From assembly GCA_965285935.1 (NCBI GenBank), contig OZ260666.1:13144001-13208000 (forward strand): DNA of 64,000 nucleotides. Reading direction: 5' to 3'. The translations under genes were made by a program, and so were the position numbers. The stretch comes from Ophelia neglecta. Its lineage: Eukaryota. Positions 1-28,161 of this stretch are shown here, one piece after another (the first letter of the stretch is position 1; every line of letters begins with the position of its first letter). The notes beneath the pieces were generated by a model. The model ran no database searches, had not been told where the DNA came from, and saw nothing but the letters and a program-made list of their open reading frames with translations.

Positions 1-589
1 ATCAACAGATTCTGCTCACAACTTGAAAGTTGCGTGTCACTTATAGGCAAGTAGCAAATTAGAAACTGTAAATAGTTTGAAAATCAAATTTCGAATTAAA
101 ACAGTGCATTTATTATAAAAAAAGAATTTGTATGAAAAAAATGTCAGGAGGACTGACTCGGCGAAAATTAGCTTTAAATCAGAAACTTATGGTGATGGAC
201 TCGTCGGATATACTACTGTTAATCAGAAACTTTAGAAATTTGCCAAAATTTCCTGTATTCTATCTCTTAACTTTCTATGGTGTGAGAGAGGGAGAGAGAA
301 AAGCTTTTGCTATTGACAATATGGAATTATAATTGACTATGGATTTGTTTATTATTAATACTTATGCTAGTAAGGCTGTGACTCGATGAGTCATTCAAGA
401 ATAATATATTAGTAATGATAAGTAGCATTTAGCATCGATTTAGTGATTTTGGGAAAAACTTCACATCTTGTCTTTCTATTATATTACTATTAGAATGATT
501 GGTGATTTTATTTTCCTACTTTTGAATGAGAGTTACAAATCATTTAAATTTGTACAAATATTAAATCGCAACCAATACGGTGCAAACCA

Positions 590-800
590 AATAGAGTCAT
601 AGTCAGAGTCATAGTCATAGCGTTTATTCAACAAAAAATATACCATGAAAATATATACAAATGAAATGGACAATAAAAGTACAATGTAAGTAAACTACAT
701 ATAAACATAATGAAACATTGTGTGTGTCCAAATGAATTAAAATATAGGTCAGGGAGACTCTCATTAAGTCTTAATAAGACGCTAGCATGAGAACCACCTT
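590..800 (-). mobile_element. 3' end of a non-LTR retroelement (hairpin, AATAAA, hexamer-repeat tail)
   Basis: On the minus strand: hairpin ctcatgctagcgtcttattaagacttaatgagag, later AATAAA directly followed by a (TGACTA/TGACTC)n tail. Confidence 0.5.
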
Positions 801-1278
801 ATGACATATAGCTTTTCATTAATTTGCATATATGAAAGATTGAAGATGAATCATGGCTTTTATATGGGTTTGCACATATCTGTCCATTGATAGCATCACC
901 CAACCGCGCTGATATAATAATAGGGCAAGGAAAAAGACAGTGACAGCGCCTTAACTAATTTAATATAAACAAGCGTATGTTTCACAAGACGTAAATAAGC
1001 TTCCCGTCAGTATGACGAGATAACGGTAGAAATGACACATTAGTGTTAAGATTTTAAGAGCTGGTTTGGAAGGAATTCCCATAAAAATATATATTTTTTG
1101 AATAAATAATTTTTTTTGATTGTGCAATGTATGTAATTTCATAAGTTTCATTCTTGATCATCTTTTGAAAACTGATTAGTAATATCCTAAATAATCTTTA
1201 ATACTCATATTCGCAATTAATTTTTCGGGGAATGATATCTTAATGTTTGTATATCTACTTCAACGCAAGTATAAGTTT

Positions 1279-2064
1279 TTACTTGTTAGGATCCAATTCT
1301 GTCATACTATTCTTATTCGCATTTTGTAGAACATCGACCATATCTTGGTTTCCTTGAAAACGGGCTACGACAAGTCCCGTACAGCCACGGAGCGCCTTTT
1401 TGGAGACGTCAAACCCCCTTTCAATAAGATATTTTACAACTACTACGTTGTTGGTCATCAACGCCGATTCGAAAGCCTCGGTTTCCTTATACATTTCATT
1501 TGGTTTGTACGGCTCTTGCGATGCCAGGTGTTCGGCGATATCAAGTCTCCCAAACAACGGGGTTCGGCCTTCTAAGTCCTCGATGTTTACATCAGCACCT
1601 TTCTCAATCAAATGATCTATAACTCGTATATGTTTATTTCCACAAGCCATATGCAGTGCCGTTTGCTTATTTTTGCTCAAACAATCAACTTTAACGGCTG
1701 GCTGAGAACACAGCAAGATGACAATTTCTAAGTGCCCTTTCTCAGCAGCAATATGTAGGGGGTTCAATCCATCTTTGCCAGACAGATTTACGTCGGCGCC
1801 ATTTTCCAACAAACATTTAACGACGTCAATAAATTCATTGGCGGAGGCTGACACGAGGGGGGTGAATCCGAGCTTACTCCTGGCGTTAACATTTGCTCCA
1901 GCCTTAACTTCCGACCGAACTTTTGTATAAGTGCCTGCCATCACAGCTAAGTGCAGTTGGAGCTCAGGTATTTTGGCGCCCTGAAATTCACTGAGTTCTG
2001 TATCTTGATTTCCGTTATCAATTATTTCGTCGCATTGAGACGCGAGCCCAGAGCACTCCCCTTC
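1279..2064 (-). CDS. Gene A exon 5, cytoplasmic ankyrin-repeat domain (~7 repeats, intronless)
   Basis: Acceptor tttttcag|GAA, phase 0. Ankyrin motifs: GFTPLVSA..VVKCLLENGADVN, GLNPLHIAAEKGHLEIVILL, KQTALHMACGNKHIRVIDHLIEKGADVN, GRTPLF, VVKYLIERGFDV. Confidence 0.92.
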   Translation of the reverse strand, partial: EGECSGLASQCDEIIDNGNQDTELSEFQGAKIPELQLHLAVMAGTYTKVRSEVKAGANVNARSKLGFTPLVSASANEFIDVVKCLLENGADVNLSGKDGLNPLHIAAEKGHLEIVILLCSQPAVKVDCLSKNKQTALHMACGNKHIRVIDHLIEKGADVNIEDLEGRTPLFGRLDIAEHLASQEPYKPNEMYKETEAFESALMTNNVVVVKYLIERGFDVSKKALRGCTGLVVARFQGNQDMVDVLQNANKNSMTELDPNK

Positions 2065-5000
2065 CTGAAAAATATACACAGTTAAGGAAAGGTATAAAAT
2101 TAATTCAGTATTTTTTAGAATAAAAAAGAGTTGGATATAAGAATACAGGAAAAAAATATGCATGCAAATCAAACTCATCTGATAAGACATGAATTGGGAG
2201 TTTGATTAGTATTTTAGTCTAAATTGACGCGTTAAACCGATCGTTGGACCTTTAACAACCTTATCAGGCAAACGAGTGTGTTTGTGCCCTACTTCGAAAT
2301 CAGACCAGTGGACAAGTTAGCAAATATAATTCTAGTAAAGTAAGTAACAGTTAATATATTTGTCAACAGGCTGGATTGAATGCAAGGGAGCTTGAAATAT
2401 ACTTTATGAAGGGGCATGTATCCTCGGCCAATTCGGAGAGGATACTTATTGGTGTTCACAGGACTGCCATTGGGGATATTAAACCAAATCTCGAATTCTA
2501 AATTTACTGATAACGCGAATATAAATGTGATTCAATATTTCATTAAACACCAACCTTCGTTCGTTGCAGAATTTTGGTCCCTAGAGGATAATTCCATTTA
2601 TGAAGCATTACAACACAAAAGCTATGTTAATCTGCACTATTATATATAACTGTAATTGTATCATAATCGTAAACCAAACAATAGCTAGGCAACGGTAATA
2701 TCAGGCAGAAAACAGGAAACTCCTTTATATAGTACATACCATGAAAGAACATTTCTTTACTGTCATTAGCAATCTCGAACATATCTAGGATTTTTTCAAC
2801 ATATCTAGGACGACACATTTTTTAGCAAGCGACTCAAAGTGTGTTTTCTGTAAATTTTCGTCAATATTGTACCCTTAAGTTTCAAAATTTGATTCAATCT
2901 ACAGAAATTCAAATATTTAAGCCTCCTATGAAATGAAAACGGATTTTTCTTTCTTTCCCGGAGGCGACATGAATTCCATACCTCTAGATACTGTAGGTGC
3001 CATAGAATGCATTTTTAGTAAAACATAGTAAATTGATATATTTTGACCAAATTTAATACATAACTATTTTAATTTTCAAAATCCAAACATGAGTGCAATT
3101 ACGTGTAAATGAATATGAAAGACTAAGCTAATACCAAAAGTGTGTACTTGTCAACGTTATTAGTCACGCACACGGAAGTTGAATTACCTTTACTTGATGC
3201 TTTCTTTTGCGTTGCAACCTGCACACTACCAACAGGACGGCAGCTACTATCAAAAAAAGCAATGCGATCACAGCGACAATAACGGCGACAAGTTGAAATA
3301 GATTTCCACTTTCCTGAGAAAGGGGTATATAAGTTGTAGTTGACGGATCTCCTAGAGGGATGCTTGCTGTCGTTTTATCTAAATGATTTTCAGCTGATGG
3401 ATCTGGAATACAGAGTGAGGCATTGAGCGTTAAAAAGCTCGGTGTCAAGTATTTTAAGAAACACATAAACCCAATAGAGAATAATGGTTTTAATATTAAT
3501 TTTGGGGTTATTAGTGCGAAAAGCAACAACATACCTTTGACTTCCACGTAGAAGTGTGTTAGACTGGGATTCAATCCAATGAACGATAGTTTCGTTACAA
3601 GTTGTGTATCGCCCACTTCCGGAAATGCGAGTTCTGCTTCGCACTGCAGTTCTTTGTCAGGTACAATTCTACAGTCGTAATGGTCCAAGTCTGCGGATAT
3701 GATACATTGGACGCGAGGCTCAGCTTTAGGTATAACTACAACCAAGGTAAGGTTTCCTGGCTTTTCGAGCTGCAGATGCTTGTTATTATATACAAGCTCG
3801 ATCGTGGGCTCGCCTAGCTTTTCTGTTAGGTACAAAAACGGATAGTAATACTTATGTCGGTCTGGACAAGCTGAAATAAAGAAAATAATAAATTTAATTA
3901 GAGGCAAATGATGTTTAGAGGTTGGTATTCCGTCTTTTGTGTTTCCTTGGAAACAACCTTAAACGTATTACATTAGTCAACCTAATTGATTTAAAATAAA
4001 TGGAAATTGAAATCAACCTGACCATGGCTGAATAAATATTTAACCTTTTGCGCGAGGTTTCAATAAACTGGGCCCAAATATATCCACAAGATGGGTTAAT
4101 GGCGTTGTACATTGAACATGTGATCCATCATGGCCACTTATTTAGGGCTAACAGGCGTTAATACTTCATTGGTATTCATAAAAGACTGTTTGGTCTACGT
4201 AAATGTCATGTTACATCGTTACATCGCGAAATGTTCTAAACACTAGAGTATTAAAACAATGATTAACAGCAGTTCACGCGTCTAGAATACATACACACAA
4301 ACCCGTTTGCCATGGAAAACGCTACTTTGATTCGGTTTTGTCCAGGAGTTGCGTTTATTAACATCATCGCCTTTAGGCTTTAGGTTAAAAATATAAATTA
4401 TCCTCATTTCAAAACTCCCAAGGTTTACTCGAAAAGTTTATAATTATGAAAAAGATTAACACTGGGTGGTCTACTTTAATTAAACTCGTTTACGAAGTTT
4501 TAGTTTACTTATAATACTGACGTAACCTAGCGCTGTAGAACTAAATCGGTTGTTGTTGATGCTTATTTGCATATTACTTATGTCAGATAATGTGCATTCG
4601 GTAAAATTTACCTGTTGATTTTATGACCTTCAGTTCGGCGGCATCGATTAAAGCGAGTTTTTCTCCTTTTATATATATCTCTATGTCATATTGCCCGCTA
4701 TCAGACAACACAGTTTTTTCTATTGAGAATCCAATATAGGTAACATTATCAATCAGAGAGACATTGTTAGTATAGTAACTAGCATTCTCAATAGCACTAT
4801 TATTGATTAGCATCTGATACTGGGGTAGCGATTTTACGAGTCGTATGTAGTCAACCATGCCCAGACTGCGGTTGTAGTTCCACAAGAAGCGGGCGTTTTC
4901 CCCATCACAGACGTACAGTTTATCCGGGCGTTGCAGCCAGTCTGAAAGAGAAACCGCTATTTAGGTTATTTCCCAATAATATTGGTGTGTGTGTTGTTGA

Positions 5001-5557
5001 CAGTGGTCACACTATAAACTTGAAAAAAAAGGGCCGAAATATAAAATATATAAACACATACTTATTGAGTTACAGAACATATGATGAATGTATTAAAATT
5101 GAAAAAAAAACACCTTGACAGCAATAGAAAACTAAAAAATAAAAGATGTTCGCAAAAACAAAACATTGTGGATATATGGTAATTTAATACTTTCATAATA
5201 AGTACTAAAACATTCCATATCTGCCCAATAAATTTTCCCTACTCTCCTCCTTGTTTTCATATGTTAATTATCCAATAGATCAACAGTGTGTGTGTGTGTA
5301 TGTTAAGTATGGTTTATAAGTGATAGATACTTGCATTCGGAAAATTTCCCGTGCCGTTATACGCATGATTAGTATGTGCTGTATTGCGCCGGCTGCCGGA
5401 TAAAATATGACATATAATTGACAAAAAAACATCTCACTTATTAGTATACGTGGCTTGTGATTTAAATTTAAAAATATTTACCCCCTGTGGCGGTTGCAAT
5501 TGGCTCAAAGAGTAGGGAGTTCATTGCTAAAACCGATAGTGCTGTAACCAACGTCAT
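1279..5557 (-). CDS. Gene A: type I IgSF membrane receptor with cytoplasmic ankyrin repeats (5 coding exons, ~580 aa)
   Basis: Exons 5557-5482, 4941-4612, 3870-3535, 3402-3188 and 2064-1279. All introns are GT-AG with phases 1,1,1,0. The total is 1743 nt, in frame, ending in TAA. Order: signal peptide, V-like Ig, second beta domain, Ser/Thr stalk, TM (LVAVIVAVIALLFLIVAAVLLVVC) followed by basic RLQRKRK, then ankyrin repeats. Exons 2-4 are matched by paralog gene B. Confidence 0.85.
3188..3402 (-). CDS. Gene A exon 4, stalk + transmembrane helix
   Basis: Acceptor tattccag, donor AAG|gtaatt (phase 0). Thr/Ser/Pro stalk, ~24-aa hydrophobic run, basic stop-transfer residues. Confidence 0.9.
3535..3870 (-). 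CDS. Gene A exon 3, second extracellular beta-rich (Ig-like?) domain
   Basis: Acceptor tatttcag, donor AAG|gtatgt, 336 nt. ACPDRHKYYYPFLY...; 49/112 identical without gaps to gene B exon 3 (hand count). Confidence 0.9.
4612..4941 (-). CDS. Gene A exon 2, atypical V-set-like Ig domain
   Basis: Acceptor ctctttcag, donor CAG|gtaaat, 330 nt, phase 1-1. DWLQRPDKLYVCDGENARFLWNY...GFSIEKTVLSDSGQYDIEI...AELKVI has the DxGxY tyrosine corner but no B- or F-strand Cys. Confidence 0.9.
5482..5557 (-). CDS. Gene A exon 1, signal peptide
   Basis: MTLVTALSVLAMNSLLFEPIATATG, then phase-1 donor GGG|gtaaat. Confidence 0.7.
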
Positions 5558-7995
5558 ATTGATATCCCTTCTTTCTGTATGTCGTTCTTTCCGATCAGAA
5601 ATAAGGTTGATGTTTTTCTTTTTTCTGGAAGGCGTAAAATGTAAACTTTTATGGTCTATTAAATTGCCTATAGTAAAAAGTAATCTCATATTGAAAATTG
5701 AAATTAATTTTCTTAGAAGATTTACATTGTTGGAACCCACGTTCATACTTTTAATACGACTCCATTATAAACCTACTAGCAGTAATGCATTTAGAACCTG
5801 CAGCTTACGTGGATGATAAGAGAAACTAATTTAAAATCTTGCTTCAACATGTTCAATATAGGGTAATTTGCATTCAGTAAATAGAACAACTTTATTGAAA
5901 ATATATACCTTACCATTTCACTTTCAACCTAAAACGAATCTCCTAGTGGCAGAAGTCATAAAACGTACGGCATGGTTAAACACAGTGTACATTATATGAT
6001 AGTCCAAATCGAATTATTTGTAACGTTCCCGACATTTGTTTAACTGTGATTGTTGATCGGGCTAACACGGTGTGCCCAAATGCTAGGTAATAGTACAGGT
6101 AAAGTTGGAGAGATATTAACGCACATACTTACTTAGAAGTGGTTCAATGTTCACTGATAAGCTTATCATTCACATTGTCACTACATGATAATCCGTGCAC
6201 TTGAGTTTAACAAACACAAACATCCATCATATGAATAGGCAAGCAAACACTCCTCATTTTAATGCCTACTTTTCAATGCCCTTATAGAAATGGGTATAAT
6301 ATAAAACATATAATAAAAAATATTCTCTACCTGAAGCACATAGGGGTGAAGAAATGAATAATAAAGGAAAATGTCTTCCGAGTGATTTGCCGCTGATGAT
6401 TTTAAAGGCCCCATTTTTATGGATTTTTTTTTCAGCTTTTATTATAATGTCAATCATAGTCCCAACACTTTGTTCAGTATTGTGCAACAATAATAAATGG
6501 TATCTTTAACGTTCAGTTTCAATTTGTTTACCTAAAGCCAAAAGTGTTTTGAAGCTTTCTTCTACATTGTAGAATTTCAGTTTATCGAAATGCCATCCTG
6601 TTATGAACTCGTTACACAGGTCAGCAACGGTAATCATATACACCAAGGCAAACATATCTGCGCCGTTTAATCATTACTCAAACTTTGGATGTCATGTGAA
6701 AAACGCCAGTTTACATCGAACAAGGCAGAATATATCATATTATTTTTCCTTGATCTTAGGCGGCCATATACAGTGGCAGACAGCCATTTGTGATGGGCAT
6801 GAAGTATGAACTCAAACATTCCGAAACATATCGATGGCTTTTGCCAATTCTGAAATTAAGTTCTGCCCTTATTTTGACTGATGTTGCCTGTTTGTCTCAA
6901 CGTTCGACTATTACACGCATAGGTTTCGCTAAAAAAGCATTTGGCACAAAAATGTATATTCTTTTTATCCCTCCAGACGGCAATTGTGCTGTTTTGTCTT
7001 TTCGTTATATGAACATAATTATCTATACTGGGTCGCTGAGGATCCCATGTTTCCCGAGCTCCGCCTCTGCTGTTAAAGTTCAATCACATACTTTGGGTGA
7101 CAGGTGTTCTGTTAATCAATACTTTTGACGAATAAGACCGTGGTTATCTAAAGCGCTGTTCCCAAACCCTGTTTTTCCCCGCCCTAGCAGGTTTGAGATT
7201 GCATTTCGGGCACCATATCACTGAGATGACCTCAGAGTCATTGGCTAGCAGGCTGTCGACTATTCTGAAAAAAGAAACTTGTTGCATCCCAACTAGATAC
7301 CCTCTCCCTGGGCATGCATTTACCCCCAAGCCAGATTGCGCTTGGCAGGGATTTCATCTGATTTTTTTCTAGAGTTCAGTCATGGCTTATTGTTTTCAAA
7401 GATGTTTGGGAATTAAATTTTGTTTCACATATATAATTGATAATCAAGGTTGATGAGAAATATGGAATCCTTCATATAATTCCGAGCTACACGAGTGATT
7501 TCAGACATGTCAGGCGGATGGCGGCAGGCGGCAAACACATGATCTATTATCCTGAGAAGCCAGTTTCCGGCTTCAAGTCCACGAAAAAATCTTTTTAGGC
7601 AGAAATTGGCAAGGAGCACTTCTGATAATATTATGATTATAGGTCAAGCTGGTGTGATGAATGTCATTACTTTTAAACGAACTGCATAATGATTAAAACG
7701 TTTGTATACACTAATATAGAAGAGGAAAATAACTCATTGATTAACATGTGGTTAAATATAAATTAATAAGACAGTGGCTATTAGTAAACACGAAACGTAT
7801 TGTTGACAGCATAATAAATACAAAGCTTTCTGTGAAAAACACATGACCAAATGAGATGCGAAGCAGAATGAAGAAGTTGATCATGACTAAAAGGGCTGTT
7901 CTGAATCGGCAGACGCGCGAACGGCGAACGCGGACCTTCAAAATTTGTAGCATTACGGCATGAACTCTGGCGCCGTCAGGAGACTGATCCGACTG

Positions 7996-16612: not shown

Positions 16613-16738
16613 TTAAAACTGGGTTTCTGATGTAATTTGTCCGCTTATTAAAGGGTTAGCTTCTTCACGTCTCGGCGAAACCACATGTCCTTCCATATTA
16701 TCGATCGTTTCGTCCGTACCATCGGCTCTGTCGTCTCC
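16613..16738 (-). CDS. Gene B terminal exon, 41-aa acidic tail
   Basis: Acceptor ctttcttcttgttatag. GDDRADGTDETIDNMEGHVVSPRREEANPLISGQITSETQF*. DETIDN matches DEIIDN at the start of gene A exon 5. Not in the ORF track. Confidence 0.72.
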   Translation of the reverse strand, partial: GDDRADGTDETIDNMEGHVVSPRREEANPLISGQITSETQF

Positions 16739-19700
16739 CTATAACAAGAAGAAAGAATATGTCATACTTACGCATAATGCATAAGCAAAAGTGTGTTTTA
16801 TACTGTTAGTCCGGGCCCTTAGCGAGTTTTAAGGGGGGGGGGGGGGTGGTTCAGATTCGTCTACAATTACCAAATTTCGCCCAGATGTAGACCAGAACGT
16901 ACTCTTGATTTTTGGAGGGCGCCGAGACAGGCGCTCACTAGGGCAGGAAAATTGGTTAAATCAAAGATTGCCGCCAGCCGGAATGCCTTAATATCATAAC
17001 TTCGGAGCTAGAAGTCATAGGATCATAAATGAAAGCATTATTTATAGGCTTTTACCTCAAGGATTCCAAATATTACCTCAGTTTTAACATTAAAGGTGAG
17101 GTTAACCCCCTAATGCATATAGAATGTAATTAGGCTGATTTGAAAGTTATAGACATGCAACATTTTAGAGTCAAAGATTAGATCATATTACAGTTCACTA
17201 CTGATATACAAACTATGGCAAATAAAGCCAAACTCATAAGGTTTACGAATCATCTTAATGGTCCAAGTCCTTTTCCTCTGTGTTTTTATATTACAAACAT
17301 AAATGTGGCAACAATTAAGAATGCTACCCCGCGTTTGTTACAAATATGCTGAGCTCGAGTCATGTGGTAACTACAAACTGTAATGTGATGACAACTCTTC
17401 TTTTCACAATTGTCACGTCCTGATGTAGATATTGCAGAGCATTTTCACTATGAATAGCAAAGACCGTTAGGCAGACCGTGGTTCACTTCGATCAGGAAAA
17501 TTGTCTGACATTCTGGACTGTATCAAAATGCCAACTGTACAAGCAGTTCCATCTCCTCATCAACGGCGTGGTACAGGTCCACGGACTGGGAGTAGGGGAT
17601 GACAGCACATGCATCCCAAAGCGTAATTAGAATCGTGGGTTCCTCAAAAATGAGGAAAACAAAAAGGACTGCATGTTTTACTCAGAAAGGAGATTTTCTA
17701 GAAAGATATGAGTGGGAGGTTCCTCTTAAGCACCAAGTTGGAGTGTGCCCTCTAACCAACCCTATGATGTATCAGCCCTCCAACCCTGTAACCACTCTGA
17801 GGCAGACACAAGGATATTCCTCTTCGCAAATGTTGCAGCAAAGGGTCACAGAACAGCCTAAATATGTCCCGTTGACAGCGAATAAGTACTTCTTGCTGTA
17901 CCATACTTCACCTCACTTGGTTTTTCATAGCTGTGGGCGGGCCATGGTATTGGGAAAAATTTCCATGATATTCCCAAACATGATATCTGGTCTCATCTTT
18001 GACCCTCCAAGTCGCTGGCATTGCCACTCTTCCATGCAATCACAGGATGTGATACAACATCACAGTTCCTTGCCTATGGACAGAAGACTGCCTGGGCATC
18101 TTAGCAAAGCACTCAAGGCTTCACTGAAGCACTGGTGGCCCTCACCCGAGACCCATGACTCTTCACCCTTCTGCCTCCAAACATGCAAAAGCTAAAAAGA
18201 TGCTTGGTAATCATGTACAGAAAGTGCTGTGGTTCGTCCAAGGTCTATGAAGCCAGGTACCGTATGTTTACCTATGGGGACATAGCAGTCAAATCTGTAG
18301 ATAACACATGGAATATTATTGTGTTGTTATCTTTGCCTGATAAATATATGTCTCAAAATTGCAGAGTGCAAAATGCGGCAGCAGGAATACTGACTGGGTT
18401 GCCCCTTGTAACCCTATTATTCCCATCCTATTTGAACTCCACTGGCTACCAGTGAATTTCGAAAAACATTTGTTTTAAGTTTGTATGCTGGTTTTTAAGG
18501 TATTCTTACATTTGAACCCTTATTTAACAAAAAGGTCAGCTATATGTTTATTGTTGGTGGCCCCCAGGTCAAGAGCAGTAATGCAAAGCTAACACAGGTG
18601 TTCCACCCCTGCACAGCAGATCTGTGGAACTCTCTTCCATGCAATTTAGAATCTATTTAGAATTTAATGATTTTAAATATCCAAACAAAAACTCAATTGT
18701 TCAGGGTGCTTACGATAAACTGATATGTGATTATTCTAGTCGTTTTTATATATTCAATATTCCTTTTTTGCTAATTCGTATAGCGTAACTTTAAATTGGT
18801 TATAACTATGTATTGATTGGTCCAAATTTTATGCAGAGTATAATTTGTTTTATGTATACATGTATGTACAGCGCTTTGAGCTTATTTTGGAAAAGTACTA
18901 TGTAAACGTTTAAAAATTATGCTTTACTAGATTTGATAATAATGAACAAACCTGTTTTGATTGTTGATATTTGTGGCGATAGAACAAAGCAGCCAGTACA
19001 CTGATCAGTGCGACTATTGTTAAAATGACGATCACCACAATTAATACAACAATCAGTGATATGTTGTCGGTACCGTTGTCGGAACATAATGGCGAGGTTA
19101 CTGTTGATGTAATTGGTGCCTTTTGGGTTCTAGAGGACAAGGTTTCCATTTTATATTGGGTAGTCTGTGCCGAAGAATCTATAAGATAGAAACCGACAAT
19201 TGTAAAGCTAGTTTCCATTGACAGAAGAAAGCAACAAAGAAATAAAAGAAAAATAGCATTGTAATATCAAGAGCAGTAACGACTCACACTAAAGAACATT
19301 GTACCGAAATTAAGGATACCTGTGGACTTAATATAAAATGTTGTTATGCTTGGTTCACGCGCCACGAATGCAAGTTTGACTATGACTTCTTCATCCTGTT
19401 TACTTGAAAAGAAAATCTCCACTTCACACTCCGTCTCTATATTTTTCCTTCCACTGCAGGCTTGAGCCATTTGGTTCATGTATATAGTACACTCTACAGG
19501 TGGCTCAGCCGCTGGTATCGTAGATCGTAGGGTTATATTTCCAGGCTTGTTCATCTCTATCCGTTTGTTGTTATATATAGGTTCCGTCACAGGCTTCCCA
19601 CACTTATTTGTTATATAGAGAACGGGATACTCATATTTTGGACGGTCAGGGCAGGCTGAAATATTAACACAGTTAATGCTTACTACATAATAGATGGTCT

Positions 19701-20921
19701 TATATCCTAGATTGTATGTGTTCCCATAAAATAATGATTATTTATTATTAGGGAAAGCTTTGGTATTAACTGAAGAAGCATCTTTTCTATTCTGTTTTCT
19801 TCAATATGTTTTCCCCTCTCCCTCTTCTCTCATTTACATGTATAATGAATATACTTAAACATATTATTATAAGTCCGGGTAAATAAGCTGATCTATAGCT
19901 TCACCCTATTGCTAAATATATGTTGTATACAATCATTTATGGATGTATGTATGTATCAAAATAGCAATAAACTGCTGAAAACTGAAAATATTTAATTTTA
20001 CGGGTTTCGATGAAAACAGCTATATTTGCACACTGCCTTGTTATAGGTAATAAAGAATGATAAATTAACCTTTACCTGTTTTTCTTATCACAATTAGACT
20101 GGCAGATTTCGAAAGTATCACGTCTGCATTCGCAGGAAGAATGTTTATCGAATATGTACCATTGTCCGATATTGAAGCATTTTTCAGGGTGAATCCATAG
20201 GAACTATCATTAATGTAAGTAAACCGGGGGTCGACCTCTAAGGGATCCTTGTTCGGGTACATTTCCACCAGATTTTTCCAATCCGGAGGGTCTTTTGTAA
20301 ACTGTGCAAATTGAAAAATCTCAATAGCATGATGGTAGTTCCATATCAACTGGGTCGATTCACCTTCGCATACGTACACTGGATCCGGGCTCTCTAGCCA
20401 GTCTGCAAATAGTTCCATATTAAAATTACATGAACTTTGATATGTTCTTATGAAAGTTGTTACTTAACGATAAGCAACAAACTGTAATGTAATAGATAGA
20501 TACCAATCGTCATTTAAAGTCCAAACAAGATGTAACAAAGAAATTATGAACGGATAGTGAAAACTACTATTTTGACAGATATATAAATATCAAACCTGCA
20601 CGAAGAAACGAAAATATTTGTTTTGTTTTTTCATAAACTCTGAGTTGGGAACATCGACGATTTTCTTTACTTGCATGTAGTTCAGTTTTCTTATTATTAG
20701 TTTGATTTTATAGTTGGAGCAGATTATATTTGTCAAATATTGCAATGCTAGGCACAGCATTCATTAATGAAACAAGTATTATCACATCCGATACGTGGTG
20801 TATAATTTTGTGATGGTCTAAAGCAAATATATGAGTTCTTACTATTATTTGGCTGATCGCTTCCGATCAGGTACACATGTATAATCGGTATAATTAAAAC
20901 TTGAGCATTCATTCGCGCCAT
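16613..20921 (-). CDS. Gene B: type I IgSF membrane receptor, paralog of gene A, short cytoplasmic tail without ankyrins (~364 aa)
   Basis: Exons 20921-20843, 20402-20076, 19655-19320, 19178-18952 and 16738-16613. GT-AG introns with phases 1,1,1,0; 1095 nt in frame; AATAAA 14 nt after the stop. The first coding exon and start codon are less certain. Confidence 0.82.
16807..18285 (+). mobile_element. Degenerate Academ-like DNA transposon (XPG/FEN1-like nuclease transposase remnant) in the last intron of gene B
   Basis: Broken frames give SLRSGKLSDILDCI, QPCNHSEADTRIFL and GIGKNFHDIPKHDI..L*PSKSLALPLFHAITGCDTTSQFLAYGQKTAW. These are the EADT and GCD motifs of XPG-like nucleases, as in Academ transposases. 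In-frame stops are present. Possible terminus TAGTCCGGGCCCTTAGCG at 16807. Confidence 0.72.
18357..18720 (+). mobile_element. L2/CR1-group LINE 3' fragment
   Basis: RVQNAAAGILTG followed by frameshifted PIIPILFELHWLPV, the typical L2 ORF2 C-terminal signature. Confidence 0.75.
18952..19178 (-). CDS. Gene B exon 4, stalk + TM
   Basis: Thr/Ser stalk, then ISLIVVLIVVIVILTIVALISVLAALFY, then RHK. Donor CAG|gtttgt, phase 0. Confidence 0.9.
19320..19655 (-). CDS. Gene B exon 3, second extracellular domain
   Basis: 336 nt, the same length as gene A exon 3. ACPDRPKYEYPVLY...KPGNITL...AEPPVEC. Confidence 0.9.
20076..20402 (-). CDS. Gene B exon 2, atypical V-set-like Ig domain
   Basis: 327 nt, phase 1-1. 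WLESPDPVYVCEGESTQLIWNY...RFTY..YGFTLKNASISDNGTYSINI...ASLIVI. Confidence 0.9.
20843..20921 (-). CDS. Gene B putative signal-peptide exon (coding part; exon probably begins at 20953)
   Basis: MARMNAQVLIIPIIHVYLIGSDQPNN with phase-1 donor A|gtaaga. A strong polypyrimidine acceptor ctctttctctcctccag at 20955-20954 implies a further upstream exon (candidate donor |gtaagt at 21084). Confidence 0.55.
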
Positions 20922-24302: not shown

Positions 24303-27300
24303 CTTGAGATGAATAATACAATAAAACGTTAACATAATATAGGTTTGTTTGACACAAAGAACATTTCAATCACCAAAAACGAACAAAGAAACAAGGGACC
24401 GGAAAGTTGATTGAGGACAAATGTTAATTATTCAATCTGGCACGGTGGTTTAAAGTCGACGATGAACATAATTGATACAACACAATTCGCTAATACTACA
24501 ATAAATGCACTAATTTAATATTGCATATCATTGCACGATTGATAATTCCGTTTATTGGAACTACTCCATAATCCCAGCGGCGACGATCCAAGCTGATCCA
24601 AGATAAAAAACAATGGTTGACTGAATGTGATAAACCATCAACTTATCTTAGAAATTCCACGATAGTTTTTCAAACCATCCATACAACAATGACGGATGCC
24701 TCAAGTAAAGTGTACAAAAGATGATTTGTTTTTCGTAAGCAAAAAAATAAAAAATTCGCCATCAATAAAAACAACTTACGACGAGGGCAACATATTATCC
24801 CAGACAAAATTACTGCAGTACAAACACAAACGGAAGTGGACGCTAGCAGGGCCAGGTTGAAACCTTCCAAATAATTCATATCCGCGTTACTCTCTAAAAG
24901 ATAAAACATTTATTTCAAACATATAATTTTAAAGCGTCTATCATTAATCGGTAAAATATGTGTGTAAAATAACTTATCACTACCATATAAAGAAGTCAAT
25001 TGTCATTAACAGGTTAAAATTGTCTTTTCCCCTAAAGTTGCAATGTAAAGTTAGTTATTAAAACTCCATATGCATACCTGAATACATTGCTCTGGTAGTG
25101 ATTGGTAAAGTGGAAAACGCGTCCTTCTCGCCTGCGGGTTTTAAGCCTAGAACTAACCAATAATTGAGGCATTTCAACAAAAGCGATATGCCTCATAGGC
25201 ACTGTGAATATATTGACCAGTGATTTTTTTAAATGTTCAATAATGAATTATTATTACACATACTTTTCAAATTTATATTTTTCACCATTCGATGGCTATT
25301 GGGGATTTGTTATATTTATTTCTCTAATGTGAAAACTTTGAACAAGGCAATTGATGAGGGCAATCAATCATGACAACGAATGATTACTGAATGTGTTCTT
25401 TCCTACCTATATATACATAATTACGTGATGCGGATTCATACTTGGATCCCAATTCCCGGCCTCTACAAGAGTAGTTCAAAATACTGTATTCCCCCACTGC
25501 TGTTGGTAAAGGTAGTTCATGTTTGTTTGTGCCATTCTCGATAGTCAAGCCATTGCACAGCCAAATATAAGTCATTAAAGGTCGGTTTTCTTCCGGAAGT
25601 GATGCGGAAGAAACTTTACATGCTAACCGGGAGTTTTCAATAGAAATGGTTGCCGGTAATGGTTTCTCTGCAAAATAAGTCAACACATTTTTAGTTTGTG
25701 ATAGTGCAAAAAAATAATGCAGGCCTGGAAGAATAAATAACAACACTGCATATGTAAACATTGGCCATTGTGTTGCTGAGGGGCTGAGGTAGTATGATGT
25801 TTATTGTTTTATGACAATTTATGAAACAAAACAAAGGAAACAATTGATAATTCAAAGGGACGGAGCCATTAAGTCGTAATATCGGCCACCGTCAGAAATT
25901 GCTATCTACAACGAACGTAATACTGTACAGTAGTTTTCGTTTCACAGCGGTTAAGAATATATAATGCACGCAAGCGGACTTTTATTCCTTGTGGCTATTA
26001 AAGCAACAATTATAGAAAATAATAATTCGGCTGTACTCACCCCAAACAAAGACGACTTTAAATTCACTGTAATTAGTTGTATGACAAGTGTATGTCCCTG
26101 CGTTTTCAATAATTACATTTGTCAAAGTAATTATCACCGACGATTTATTTGTCAAACTGAATGTCATTGTATGTGTTGCTTTTTGGTCGCCCGAGGGAAC
26201 CAACGAGGAGTTGCGAATTATGAACAAAAGACGTCCTTGGTGATAGCAGTTGAAAGTCTGCACCTTTAATGCCTCTGGTGGATTCCAAACAAGGCTGATG
26301 TTATCTCCTTCATAGACTCTTTTAAAACCATTATCTGGGCATAACAATGTTTAAGGAATGTTCAAATAGTTGTAATAAAAACAATTCACAAAATATAGCA
26401 ACCCGACACAATTTTATGGAGACGTGTTACTTACCTGGGACATATGTAGTTTCTTCCGAAGGATGAAGAGAATTAGATGAAGAGGACGCTGTGAATTCTG
26501 AAATAAGGGTCCCGATTTTATGTTTTGGAATGCTAATAATATAATAATAATTCTATATATTTATTAAGCGTATAGTACCGGAAAACCACTCGTAGCCGCG
26601 AAATGTACCATGTTGGCCAAGGAATGCAATAAAATACGATAAAACAGGCAATATGCATTTATTATTTTCAAGAAGAATGTAATGCGTTATTGTCTTAATA
26701 AGTAGTATGACATCGAATGTATTACCCATCAGACGGCTGGTTGTTATCAGTGACGTATCCTTATCTGTTGCTACGACGGTGACTCCGCCTTGGGACGACA
26801 CTGAAGGCAATGCGCCGGGGAAAGAATTATTTTAATAAACAAAAACAATATCATTTGTCTTCTAACGTTGTTATAAAGCAAGAAGACACCTGAATACGCC
26901 AGAGAGGAGGGTAGGGACAGGAAGGGGGGGGGGGGGGGGCTGGAGATTACTTTACTCTATTCATTGATAAGGAACTGCTTTCTACATTGTATAATCATCT
27001 TTTCTATAATGGCGGATTAATTTCTTTGAGTTACTGTCATAAATAATGTTCTGGAAAAAAATGTACCACCCGATTACCACGTTGAGAAATTATATGTCGG
27101 GTTCCCATGGAGTGCCGAGAGATAAAGGGAGAATAAGCGCGACTTGAGCTGTAGCATAAACCTACCTTAGTGTAAAATATATCCTGATACGTTTACATAG
27201 CATAGCATATCCGGTTGCATATTCTATCAATATACGATTAGAGGTTAAATTGAGGGAGGAGGAAATTAATACGGAACTTACCTTTTTTTATACCAAACTG

Positions 27301-28161
27301 CCAAACTAGCCCAATGATTCCGGCGAGAGCCATTGTGGTTAACAACAGTATTGCTATCAAGCCATATATTCTTAGAAATTTGCGTTTTTGTCCCCTATGG
27401 CGTAAAATCAACCTTTGATAAATGTTCTTTCTTCCGGCCTGTTCGAACTGGATGTGTGCCCTTTCCTCGCTGGACGTTCTTCTAGGATACTCATATCCGC
27501 TGCAATCTCGCCGAGTGTCATTTACCTGGCTTGGTCTTGGTCTGTTCACACTATCAGTGATGGGAAGCTCTATGATTTCGGAGTAGCAATGGCTACCGTT
27601 CGAACTGGATGTTTCGCCAGAGGTTTCGTCGGTTTCCGATGAATCATTGATGACGTGCACGCTGCGAGGTAGCTTCGGAGAGCAGTCTGCAATTGTCGCG
27701 ACCACGTTGAAATGTTTCTTAATCGATGTCTTCGGTCTCGCACCTTGATTGGTGGCATATGAATAAGGATATTTCTGAACAGAAGTTCCATGCCCAGGTT
27801 TATCATGTAATTTGTTTTCTTCTATGTTTTGATTGTTAACTGCTCTATCTTGGTGTTCATCCTCGAAAGGCACTTCATAACCATCATTAGGGACCTCCTG
27901 GTCTTCATTTTTTTCGTCGTTTCCAGTTTCGTGTCTTACGAAGGCCGAGGCGTTAGAACAATTAACATTGCCATGAGTACTTCGTGGAACATCCGGGAAA
28001 GTCAGAAGGTCTTTTCGCAAGTTGGTTGTGGCGGGAGGCTTGTAACACGCCGTTTCCCCCCTGTAATTCCAAGAAGGGCGCGGGGCCATATCGTCACTCA
28101 TCTCTGTTAGTTCAAAACTAGTTTTACCGGGCTCGATAGGGAAGAATCCACCCTCGGCCAT
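24217..28161 (-). CDS. Gene C: predicted two-pass membrane protein with Tyr-motif N-terminal cytoplasmic region and two extracellular Ig domains (8 coding exons, ~613 aa)
   Basis: Exons 28161-27282, 26800-26726, 26497-26435, 26334-26041, 25667-25407, 25146-25078, 24893-24780 and 24302-24217. All introns are GT-AG phase 1; 1842 nt in frame ending TGA. Confidence 0.78.
24780..24893 (-). CDS. Gene C exon 7, second TM helix
   Basis: Acceptor ttttatcttttag. FNLALLASTSVCVCTAVILSGIICCPR; donor C|gtaagt. Confidence 0.8.
25078..25146 (-). CDS. Gene C exon 6, linker
   Basis: 69 nt, phase 1-1. GLKPAGEKDAFSTLPITTRAMYS; donor CAG|gtatgc. Confidence 0.65.
25407..25667 (-). CDS. Gene C exon 5, C2/I-like Ig domain
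   Basis: 261 nt. LACKVSSASLP...MTYIW...YSCRGRELGS has the canonical C-W-C core. Acceptor tattttgcag, donor TAG|gtagga. Confidence 0.88.
26041..26334 (-). CDS. Gene C exon 4, V-like Ig domain
   Basis: 294 nt. VYEGDNISLVWN...FNCYH...ITLTNVIIENAGTYTC...VFVW; donor GGG|gtgagt. Confidence 0.88.
26435..26497 (-). CDS. Gene C exon 3, Ser/Thr stalk
   Basis: 63 nt, phase 1-1. tatttcag|...EFTASSSSNSLHPSEETTYVP...CAG|gtaagt. Confidence 0.8.
26726..26800 (-). CDS. Gene C exon 2, Ser/Thr stalk
   Basis: 75 nt, phase 1-1. ccttcag|...VSSQGGVTVVATDKDTSLITTSRLM...G|gtaata. Confidence 0.65.
27282..28161 (-). CDS. Gene C exon 1: disordered cytoplasmic region with Tyr motifs + signal-anchor TM1
   Basis: 293 codons from ACAATGG. 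Motifs YEVP, YSEI, YEYP and YQRL. Basic RHRGQKRKFLR precedes IYGLIAILLLTTMALAGIIGLVW. Donor AAG|gtaagt. Confidence 0.9.

What the first reader, a model, noticed from the sequence alone, without database searches (positions are those of the whole stretch)
1279..5557. Ig-ectodomain receptor with a cytoplasmic ankyrin-repeat domain
The TM exon ends in phase 0 and the next acceptor 1.1 kb downstream (tttttcag|GAA at 2064) opens an intronless 261-aa exon with ~7 ankyrin repeats. The join is independently supported because this exon starts with DEIIDN, matching DETIDN in gene B's terminal exon. The well-known single-pass receptor with intracellular ankyrins is Notch, which has an EGF/LNR ectodomain. 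I do not recognise an Ig-TM-ANK family. Inference: the ankyrin stack is a scaffold, or a releasable Notch-ICD-like or IkB-like module.
Basis: partly seen in the sequence, partly recalled or inferred. Interest (0 to 1): 0.85.

Follow-up and report, generated by a model that had tools for sequence, protein, structure and literature searches.

The report
Ig receptor gene with ankyrin tail
An unidentified invertebrate genome carries a real, much-duplicated gene family for cell-surface antibody-like receptors whose inner tail is a stack of ankyrin repeats, a combination not found in the databases or papers searched; no RNA data exist yet to show it is expressed.

Summary
On the minus strand, five exons with GT/AG borders close one frame of 580 codons: signal peptide, IgV-fold domain, second Ig-like domain, stalk plus membrane helix plus RKRK, then a 261-codon exon with about 6-7 ankyrin repeats.

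Other evidence is stronger:
- In one paralogue, L031, a single 356-codon open frame runs through stalk, membrane helix, linker and the same ankyrin tail with no splice.
- In four further diverged lineages the membrane exon ends AAG|GT in phase 0 and the ankyrin exon starts after a pyrimidine tract in phase 0.
- In three copies the ankyrin frame has no possible start codon of its own.
- At least 21 loci on two chromosomes place an ankyrin frame just downstream of this family's second-domain exon.

No public protein or paper searched shows this architecture, and no RNA run exists. Function is inferred only: most likely a recognition receptor whose ankyrin stack docks cytosolic partners. Nothing supports Notch- or IkB-like release.

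The scan had already found this architecture on other DNA of this genome (s1-730847, s1-730835, s1-735110, s1-742008). It is a new variant of a known kind, of moderate interest.

The parts
5482..5557 (-). Exon 1: start codon and signal peptide (25 codons + 1 base), donor G|GTAAAT
   Evidence: It is 92% conserved in the L036 copy.
4612..4941 (-). Exon 2: domain 1 with an IgV fold. It has five N-glycosylation sequons. The B-strand Cys and the Trp are conserved, but the F-strand Cys is absent.
   Evidence: (alignment A2)
3535..3870 (-). Exon 3: domain 2, an Ig-like beta-sandwich with four conserved Cys. This is the family's signature exon, with more than 150 copies in the genome.
   Evidence: (A1)
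3188..3402 (-). Exon 4: Ser/Thr/Pro-rich stalk, membrane helix (3221-3301) and RKRK. It ends AAG|GTAATT in phase 0.
2065..3187 (-). Intron 4 (1123 nt) between the membrane exon and the ankyrin exon. If it were retained, the frame would stop after 8 codons.
1279..2064 (-). Exon 5 (terminal): 35-residue acidic linker, ankyrin repeats (about 1315-1959) including the conserved odd fifth repeat TPLFGRLDIAEHLA..PY, and stop TAA at 1279-1281.
   Evidence: A3
1197..1202 (-). First poly(A)-signal-like hexamer (ATTAAA), 77 nt after the stop. AATAAA follows at 623-628. This is a weak consensus match only.

Best explanation
The five exons at 1279-5557 (minus strand) form one gene. It encodes a type I membrane protein of about 580 residues: signal peptide, IgV-fold domain, second Ig-like domain, short glycosylated stalk, one membrane helix, a basic stop-transfer patch, an acidic linker of about 45 residues (from the end of the membrane helix to the first repeat), and a cytoplasmic stack of 6-7 ankyrin repeats. 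It belongs to an ankyrin-tailed branch (at least 21 loci) of a very large lineage-specific two-domain Ig receptor family, with more than 150 copies mostly on one chromosome. That much is shown or strongly implied by the DNA. The following is inferred. The ectodomain binds an extracellular or cell-surface ligand. The ankyrin stack works as a fixed docking platform that brings cytosolic partners to the engaged receptor, playing the role that death, TIR or ITAM/ITIM tails play in other innate receptors. Family members with other tails, such as the short-tailed neighbour gene B, would act as variants or decoys. The tandem duplication and fast evolution fit an immune or self/non-self recognition role.
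For: - Gene model: the frame closes with canonical splice sites.
- Fused paralogue: in L031, one open frame of 356 codons (L031:3837-4907, exon from the acceptor at 3874) contains stalk, membrane helix, RRRR, a 62-residue linker and the ankyrin tail. Pfam finds Ank_2 at 4e-41 in it. Its linker length equals that of the spliced models in other paralogues (47-64 residues).
- Splice phases: in gene A and in L032, L033, L034 and L035 the membrane exon ends AAG|GT in phase 0 and the ankyrin exon starts in phase 0 after a pyrimidine tract and CAG.
- No own start codon: in L033-L035 an in-frame stop lies 3 codons before the acceptor and the first ATG lies inside repeat 1.
- Common origin of the tails: they are collinear at 37-40% identity and share an odd fifth repeat (A3).
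- Recurrent linkage: an ankyrin frame lies 0.5-7 kb downstream, on the same strand, of a family exon 3 at 21 loci on contigs C9 and C7.
- Selection: deep paralogues give dN/dS 0.25-0.41.
- Topology: six sequons in the ectodomain against one in the tail, and a helix with hydropathy 3.56 followed by basic residues.
- Folds.
Against: No transcript evidence exists. The only public runs that hold this DNA are DNA contigs without joints. No database protein spans the junction. Between recent copies the ankyrin exon evolves fast (dN/dS 0.6-1.1), which fits either diversifying selection or relaxed constraint. Some family copies are broken, for example C9:10626890, which has two stops. Nothing identifies a ligand or a cytosolic partner, so the mechanism is inference from domain types and family dynamics.
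Confidence: 0.75

Rival explanations
1. The ankyrin exon is a separate small gene, or an upstream exon of the giant ankyrin gene that lies downstream, and is never spliced to the membrane exon. The Ig gene would then end by read-through 8 codons after exon 4.
For: No RNA shows the junction. In gene A an in-frame ATG lies 42 codons upstream of the acceptor (ORF 1279-2190). Read-through of the exon 4 donor stops after 8 codons. A giant ankyrin frame lies about 12 kb downstream on the same strand.
Against: L031 has membrane helix and ankyrin tail in one frame. Phase-0/phase-0 borders are conserved in diverged lineages. In L033-L035 there is no possible start codon before repeat 1. The exon ends in a stop in every copy. 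The upstream ATG stretch of gene A is AT-rich intron-like sequence and is not conserved.
Confidence: 0.1
2. The architecture is real for the family, but this particular copy, one of five recent tandem duplicates, is silent or decaying.
For: There are five near-identical copies within 0.6 Mb. dN/dS is 0.6 in the ankyrin exon against the L036 copy. Other members carry stops or truncated frames.
Against: All five exons and all splice sites of this copy are intact. All five copies keep the 261-codon frame open. Exon 3 shows dN/dS 0.09.
Confidence: 0.12
3. The tail is a releasable signalling module. After ligand binding and ectodomain shedding, intramembrane cleavage frees the ankyrin domain. The freed domain then enters the nucleus like the Notch intracellular domain, or traps a Rel-type factor like IkB.
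For: The protein is single-pass, has a short ectodomain and stalk, has a basic patch next to the membrane, and has 6-7 ankyrin repeats as in Notch and IkB.
Against: The 60 best solved-structure matches are ankyrin-R/B, NOMPC, designed repeat proteins, latrotoxins, Kidins220, tankyrase and TRPA1, and none is Notch or IkB. No EGF or LNR module is present. I saw no RAM-like, PEST or degron motif, though this was by eye only. The basic patch is what any type I membrane protein has.
Confidence: 0.06
4. It is an adhesion molecule with a built-in ankyrin-like adaptor. The ankyrin stack ties the Ig molecule to other membrane proteins or to the cortical skeleton. L1-type Ig adhesion molecules do this indirectly by recruiting ankyrin.
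For: The best sequence matches of the tail are the membrane-binding repeats of ankyrin-R/B (E 5e-103 and 3e-102). Domains 1 and 2 resemble those of the adhesion molecules nectin, SYG-2 and the ICAMs.
Against: Those scores reflect consensus-like repeats summed over long arrays. There is no spectrin-binding or other adaptor part. Massive tandem expansion and fast evolution are unusual for structural adhesion genes.
Confidence: 0.15

Closest known systems
Notch receptors
   Same: Single-pass type I receptor with about 7 ankyrin repeats in the cytoplasmic part and a basic patch after the membrane helix.
   Different: The ectodomain is IgV plus an Ig-like domain, not EGF/LNR. The tail is short and lacks RAM, TAD and PEST parts. 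The ankyrin block is not specifically Notch-like. The gene is hugely duplicated and lineage-specific, not a conserved developmental gene.
Expanded invertebrate and vertebrate IgSF recognition receptor families (Hydractinia Alr, Botryllus fester/uncle fester, KIR/LILR)
   Same: Type I proteins with a membrane-distal V-type domain that lacks some canonical IgSF residues. They form tandem clusters, evolve fast, and have members that differ in their cytoplasmic tails (PMC9546547 for Alr).
   Different: Those families signal through short tails with ITAM/ITIM-type tyrosine motifs (PMC9546547). Here the tail is a folded ankyrin domain. There is no sequence relationship: no Pfam hit for the Ig exons and no database relatives.
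L1-family Ig adhesion molecules with ankyrin
   Same: An Ig ectodomain functionally coupled to ankyrin repeats at the inner membrane face. The tail's best solved-structure matches are ankyrin-R/B repeats.
   Different: In L1 molecules ankyrin is a separate protein recruited by a tail motif (own knowledge). Here the repeats are part of the receptor, and no spectrin-binding part is present.
ANKRD46-type small membrane ankyrin proteins
   Same: The language-model look-alike search ranks them first for the L031 frame, because both have ankyrin repeats plus one membrane helix (score 0.92).
   Different: By my own knowledge (not tested here), ANKRD46 carries its ankyrin repeats before a C-terminal anchor and has no ectodomain. 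The order of parts is opposite and no homology was shown.
Other ankyrin-tailed Ig receptor genes of this same genome, noted earlier in this scan (s1-730847, s1-730835, s1-735110, s1-742008)
   Same: Same family and same architecture. One has an extra Mab-21-like domain after the ankyrins.
   Different: They are different loci and different tail subtypes. Those reports lacked evidence for the join, which the fused paralogue L031 now supplies.

Membership tests
Type I IgSF membrane receptor | N-terminal signal peptide | tested here: inconclusive
   Exon 1 has a 25-residue hydrophobic start (hydropathy 1.64) conserved in L036. No signal-peptide predictor was available.
Type I IgSF membrane receptor | At least one immunoglobulin-fold ectodomain | tested here: met
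   The exon 2 model has pLDDT 90 and matches IgV domains at TM about 0.8 and E about 1e-7. Exon 3 is an Ig-like sandwich. Pfam models do not detect either.
Type I IgSF membrane receptor | Canonical IgSF disulfide (B-strand Cys, C-strand Trp, F-strand Cys) | tested here: not met
   Alignment A2 has an invariant Cys11, Trp20 and D-x-G-x-Y, but no Cys after the Tyr. The fold is kept without the canonical disulfide.
Type I IgSF membrane receptor | Single membrane helix followed by basic residues | tested here: met
   27 hydrophobic residues (hydropathy 3.56) followed by RLQRKRK.
Ankyrin-repeat domain proteins | Several tandem 33-residue ankyrin repeats above Pfam cut-offs | tested here: met
   Ank_2 110 bits against a cut-off of 27.3, and Ank 91.7 bits against 21.1.
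Notch family | EGF-repeat and LNR/NRR ectodomain | tested here: not met
   No EGF or LNR hit at E <= 1 in any exon. The ectodomain folds are Ig-type.
Notch family | Regulated intramembrane cleavage that releases the ankyrin domain | not testable with these tools
   This needs cell biology.
IkB family | Soluble cytoplasmic ankyrin protein specifically related to IkB/Bcl-3/p105 repeats | tested here: not met
   The protein is membrane-anchored, and no IkB-type chain appears among the 60 best solved-structure matches.
One transcription unit (Ig-TM-ANK) | Membrane helix and ankyrin domain in one polypeptide | tested here: met
   This is met directly for paralogue L031, in a single open frame. For gene A itself it is inferred from conserved splice phases and collinear tails.
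One transcription unit (Ig-TM-ANK) | A transcript spanning the 3188|2064 junction | not testable with these tools
   No RNA run holds this DNA. The three runs found are DNA contigs with no joints.

The most novel reading that the evidence does not exclude
The receptor's ankyrin tail is one unit of the roughly 210-residue 'super-repeat' that builds the giant intronless ankyrin proteins encoded just downstream of every tail-type copy. Receptor and giant neighbour would form a two-gene cassette in which the engaged tail co-assembles with, or competes for partners of, the giant ankyrin scaffold. That would be an ankyrin-based signalling pathway for innate or self/non-self recognition with no counterpart among known death-fold, TIR or ITAM systems.
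Probability: 0.1. Interest if true: 0.85.

Novelty: new variant of a known kind. Interest (0 to 1): 0.58.

Why it matters
Receptor families that expand in tandem and swap cytoplasmic tails are how many invertebrates build recognition systems, yet the known tails are tyrosine motifs, death-fold or TIR domains. A branch of at least 21 loci with a folded ankyrin tail would add a new output module to that list. It would also give a concrete handle, the tail as bait, for finding an unknown signalling route in a poorly studied animal lineage. In addition, it shows that these genes are missed by public annotation: only single-exon fragments are in the databases.

Tried and rejected
- RNA evidence: the look-up of sequencing runs found no RNA run. 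The three holders are DNA contigs of one sample and show no joints.
- Ankyrin frames as database queries: the L031 fused frame and gene A's ankyrin exon gave only generic ankyrin proteins at 45% identity or less. The tool sees only 0.55-1.75 times the query length, so longer relatives could be missed.
- Exon 3 profile against 1.84 billion representatives: 19 hits. The short ones I read were single-exon genomic fragments; those looked up came from unnamed Logan/ENA assemblies. The three long ones, two of them named bacterial proteins, had scattered low-complexity Pfam matches, and I judged them spurious.
- A distant relative in another organism (ENA ERZ25069296; L037, L038) has the two Ig exons, but I found no ankyrin tail within 10 kb.
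- Organism identity: a COX1 fragment gave only unnamed hits. All I can say is that mitochondrial TGA is read through, as in invertebrates.
- The DEIIDN/DETIDN argument is rejected as being at chance level.
- A death domain near the giant ankyrin neighbour: none was found.
The giant neighbour frames and the C7 member were therefore not read.
- The joined (spliced) protein was never assembled or submitted. All searches and folds were done exon by exon, by reference.
- Complex prediction was not used, because I have no candidate partner.
Full report
THE GENE MODEL

Reading the minus strand of 1-6500 and computing borders and phases gives five exons.
- Exon 1, 5482-5557: ATG and a hydrophobic leader.
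- Exon 2, 4612-4941.
- Exon 3, 3535-3870.
- Exon 4, 3188-3402.
- Exon 5, 1279-2064.

Every intron begins with GT and ends with a pyrimidine tract plus AG. The lengths sum to 1743 nt, which is 580 codons and a stop. Exon 4 ends AAG|GTAATT after 957 nt, so in phase 0. Exon 5 follows TATATTTTTCAG| and stays open for 261 codons. Every search and fold was done exon by exon, by reference.

WHAT THE PARTS ARE

Pfam sees ankyrin repeats in exon 5 (Ank_2 7e-32, Ank 1e-26) and nothing in the two ectodomain exons.

Models built from alignments of paralogous exons settle the ectodomain.
- Exon 2 folds with pLDDT 90 as an IgV domain. Its best solved matches are the V domains of nectin-1, sodium-channel beta2, VSIG4/CRIg and TIGIT, at TM about 0.8.
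- Exon 3 folds with pLDDT 87 as an Ig-like sandwich. Foldseek ranks RhoGDI-type sandwiches first. The exhaustive aligner ranks a SYG-2 domain first (Z 9.7), and ICAM-1/-2/-5 and MAdCAM-1 follow at Z 8.0-8.6, amid many other beta-sandwiches.
- Domain 1 keeps the B-strand Cys, the Trp and the D-x-G-x-Y motif but lacks the F-strand Cys.
- Exon 4 has a Ser/Thr/Pro-rich stalk, 27 hydrophobic residues and RLQRKRK.
- The ectodomain carries six N-glycosylation sequons and the tail carries one.

The predicted topology is therefore type I.

IS THE ANKYRIN EXON PART OF THE GENE?

There is also no RNA. The only public runs holding this DNA are DNA contigs of one sample, and laying them shows intron and exon alike with no joints. 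The answer comes from paralogues within the same genome.

The exon 3 domain has more than 150 scored copies (279 candidates), mostly on contig C9. The ankyrin exon has four near-identical tandem copies (88-100% protein identity). It also has five diverged short-frame copies at 41-43% identity, and each of those lies just downstream, on the same strand, of a diverged exon 3. I fetched these loci and found exon 2, exon 3, a membrane exon and the ankyrin frame in the same order in all of them.

Three results matter.
1. In L031 (C9:11.83 Mb), one open frame of 356 codons runs from the stalk through the membrane helix, RRRR and a 62-residue linker into the ankyrin repeats (Pfam Ank_2 4e-41). In a genome of 37% G+C this cannot be chance. 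It shows, with no splice needed, that this family makes a polypeptide with membrane helix and ankyrin tail. Its linker length matches those of the spliced models elsewhere (47-64 residues), so the last intron is simply absent there.
2. In gene A and in L032, L033, L034 and L035, the membrane exon ends AAG|GT in phase 0 and the ankyrin frame begins in phase 0 after a pyrimidine tract and CAG.
3. In L033-L035 an in-frame stop lies three codons before that acceptor and the first ATG is inside repeat 1. The ankyrin frame there cannot be a free-standing gene.

The tails align end to end and share an unusual fifth repeat, TPLFGRxDIAEHLA...PY, which is the best-conserved stretch. They therefore descend from one ancestral tail.

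HOW MANY MEMBERS

A second tail subtype, from the 10.5-10.75 Mb cluster, was first seen at the edges of loci L017, L024 and L028-L030. Searching the genome with it shows eleven more places where an ankyrin frame follows an exon 3 hit within 0.5-7 kb on the same strand. One is on another contig (C7). One has stops, and two have shortened frames. In all, at least 21 loci in about eight to ten diverged lineages have this layout.

Deep paralogues give dN/dS 0.25-0.41 in the tail, and recent copies give 0.6-1.1. Between the window and the L036 copy, the ectodomain exons are 98-99% identical but the ankyrin exon is only 93%. The break lies near 2223-2253.

WHAT IS KNOWN ELSEWHERE

- A profile of exon 3 against 1.84 billion representative proteins found 19 hits. 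The short ones I read are single-exon genomic fragments; those looked up come from unnamed Logan/ENA assemblies. The three long ones, two of them named bacterial proteins, have only scattered repetitive matches.
- The fused L031 frame and gene A's ankyrin exon found only generic ankyrin proteins at 45% identity or less. That tool only sees 0.55-1.75 times the query length.
- A distantly related pair of Ig exons exists in another organism's assembly, without a nearby ankyrin frame.
- Four full-text searches found no paper describing an Ig ectodomain with a cytoplasmic ankyrin domain. The Hydractinia Alr paper mentions ankyrin only in connection with the Shark kinase.
- The tail's best solved-structure matches are ankyrin-R/B, NOMPC, designed repeat proteins, latrotoxins, Kidins220, tankyrase and TRPA1. 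No Notch or IkB chain is among the best 60.

EARLIER NOTES OF THIS SCAN

The same architecture was reported before on other DNA of this genome. Examples are s1-730847 and s1-730835 about 1.43 Mb beyond this window, s1-735110 with an added Mab-21-like domain, and s1-742008 with a truncated copy. At least s1-730847 lacked proof of the join, which L031 supplies. I did not re-examine those loci.

MECHANISM

Shown: the anatomy, the family, and the continuity of membrane helix and tail in one paralogue.

Inferred: gene A is spliced the same way. The protein sits in the plasma membrane with the Ig domains outside. The ankyrin stack is a docking platform for cytosolic partners.

Tandem expansion, fast evolution and tail swapping fit a recognition or immune role. 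Gene B, 11 kb upstream of gene A's start on the same strand, has the same ectodomain and a 41-residue tail. A built-in ankyrin adaptor for adhesion is a fair rival. Notch- or IkB-like release has no support beyond the coarse layout.

VERDICT

The finding is real. It is a new domain combination within the familiar class of expanded Ig receptors. It lacks any expression or functional data and is not new to this scan. I rate interest at 0.58.

Noticed in passing
G000:C9, e.g. 2407228-2411634, 1803617-1814521, 13132751-13133263 (outside the window): There are giant intronless ankyrin frames, open for 1600-5300 codons. Their matches to gene A's tail (query residues about 55-240, 41-46% identity) recur about every 630 nt inside one frame. 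They are therefore arrays of roughly 210-residue super-repeats, and the receptor tail equals one unit. One such frame lies 6-52 kb downstream, on the same strand, of all ten tail-type ankyrin exons. No death domain is nearby.
   Followed up: partly
L033:2718-5662 and L034:4002-5552: The membrane exon occurs two or three times in tandem between exon 3 and the ankyrin exon, and each copy ends ..DDK|GTAATC. These may be duplicated dead exons or mutually exclusive membrane exons.
   Followed up: no
window 965-7893 against L036: The identity between tandem copies is mosaic. It is about 98-99% in the ectodomain exons and 94.7% over the upstream block, but 90.6% from about 2223 downstream through the ankyrin exon. 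This suggests gene conversion or exchange of the tail.
   Followed up: partly
window 16613-20921 (gene B): This paralogue has the same two Ig exons and a membrane exon but a 41-residue last exon without ankyrin repeats. No ankyrin remnant lies downstream. Its last intron (about 17500-18650) holds plus-strand frames of 198 and 90 codons without a Pfam hit, probably a decayed mobile element.
   Followed up: partly
window 25982-26347 and 27238-28161 (gene C): A third Ig gene. One exon gives a weak V-set hit (1e-4, below cut-off).
   Followed up: no
G000:C7:12941047-12942249: This family member lies on another chromosome. Only about 490 nt separate exon 3 from the ankyrin match, inside a 260-codon frame. 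It may be a second case of a fused membrane-ankyrin exon. I could not fetch it.
   Followed up: no
L037:5684-6424 and L038:1756-2507 (ENA ERZ25069296): These are distant exon 2 plus exon 3 pairs (23-32% identity) in another organism's low-coverage assembly. They sit next to CUB/LDLa/LRR frames, and no ankyrin tail was found.
   Followed up: partly
G000:C223:4697-6037 (L039): Mitochondrial COX1 with eight in-frame TGA codons, so the invertebrate-type mitochondrial code applies. The organism was not identified.
   Followed up: partly
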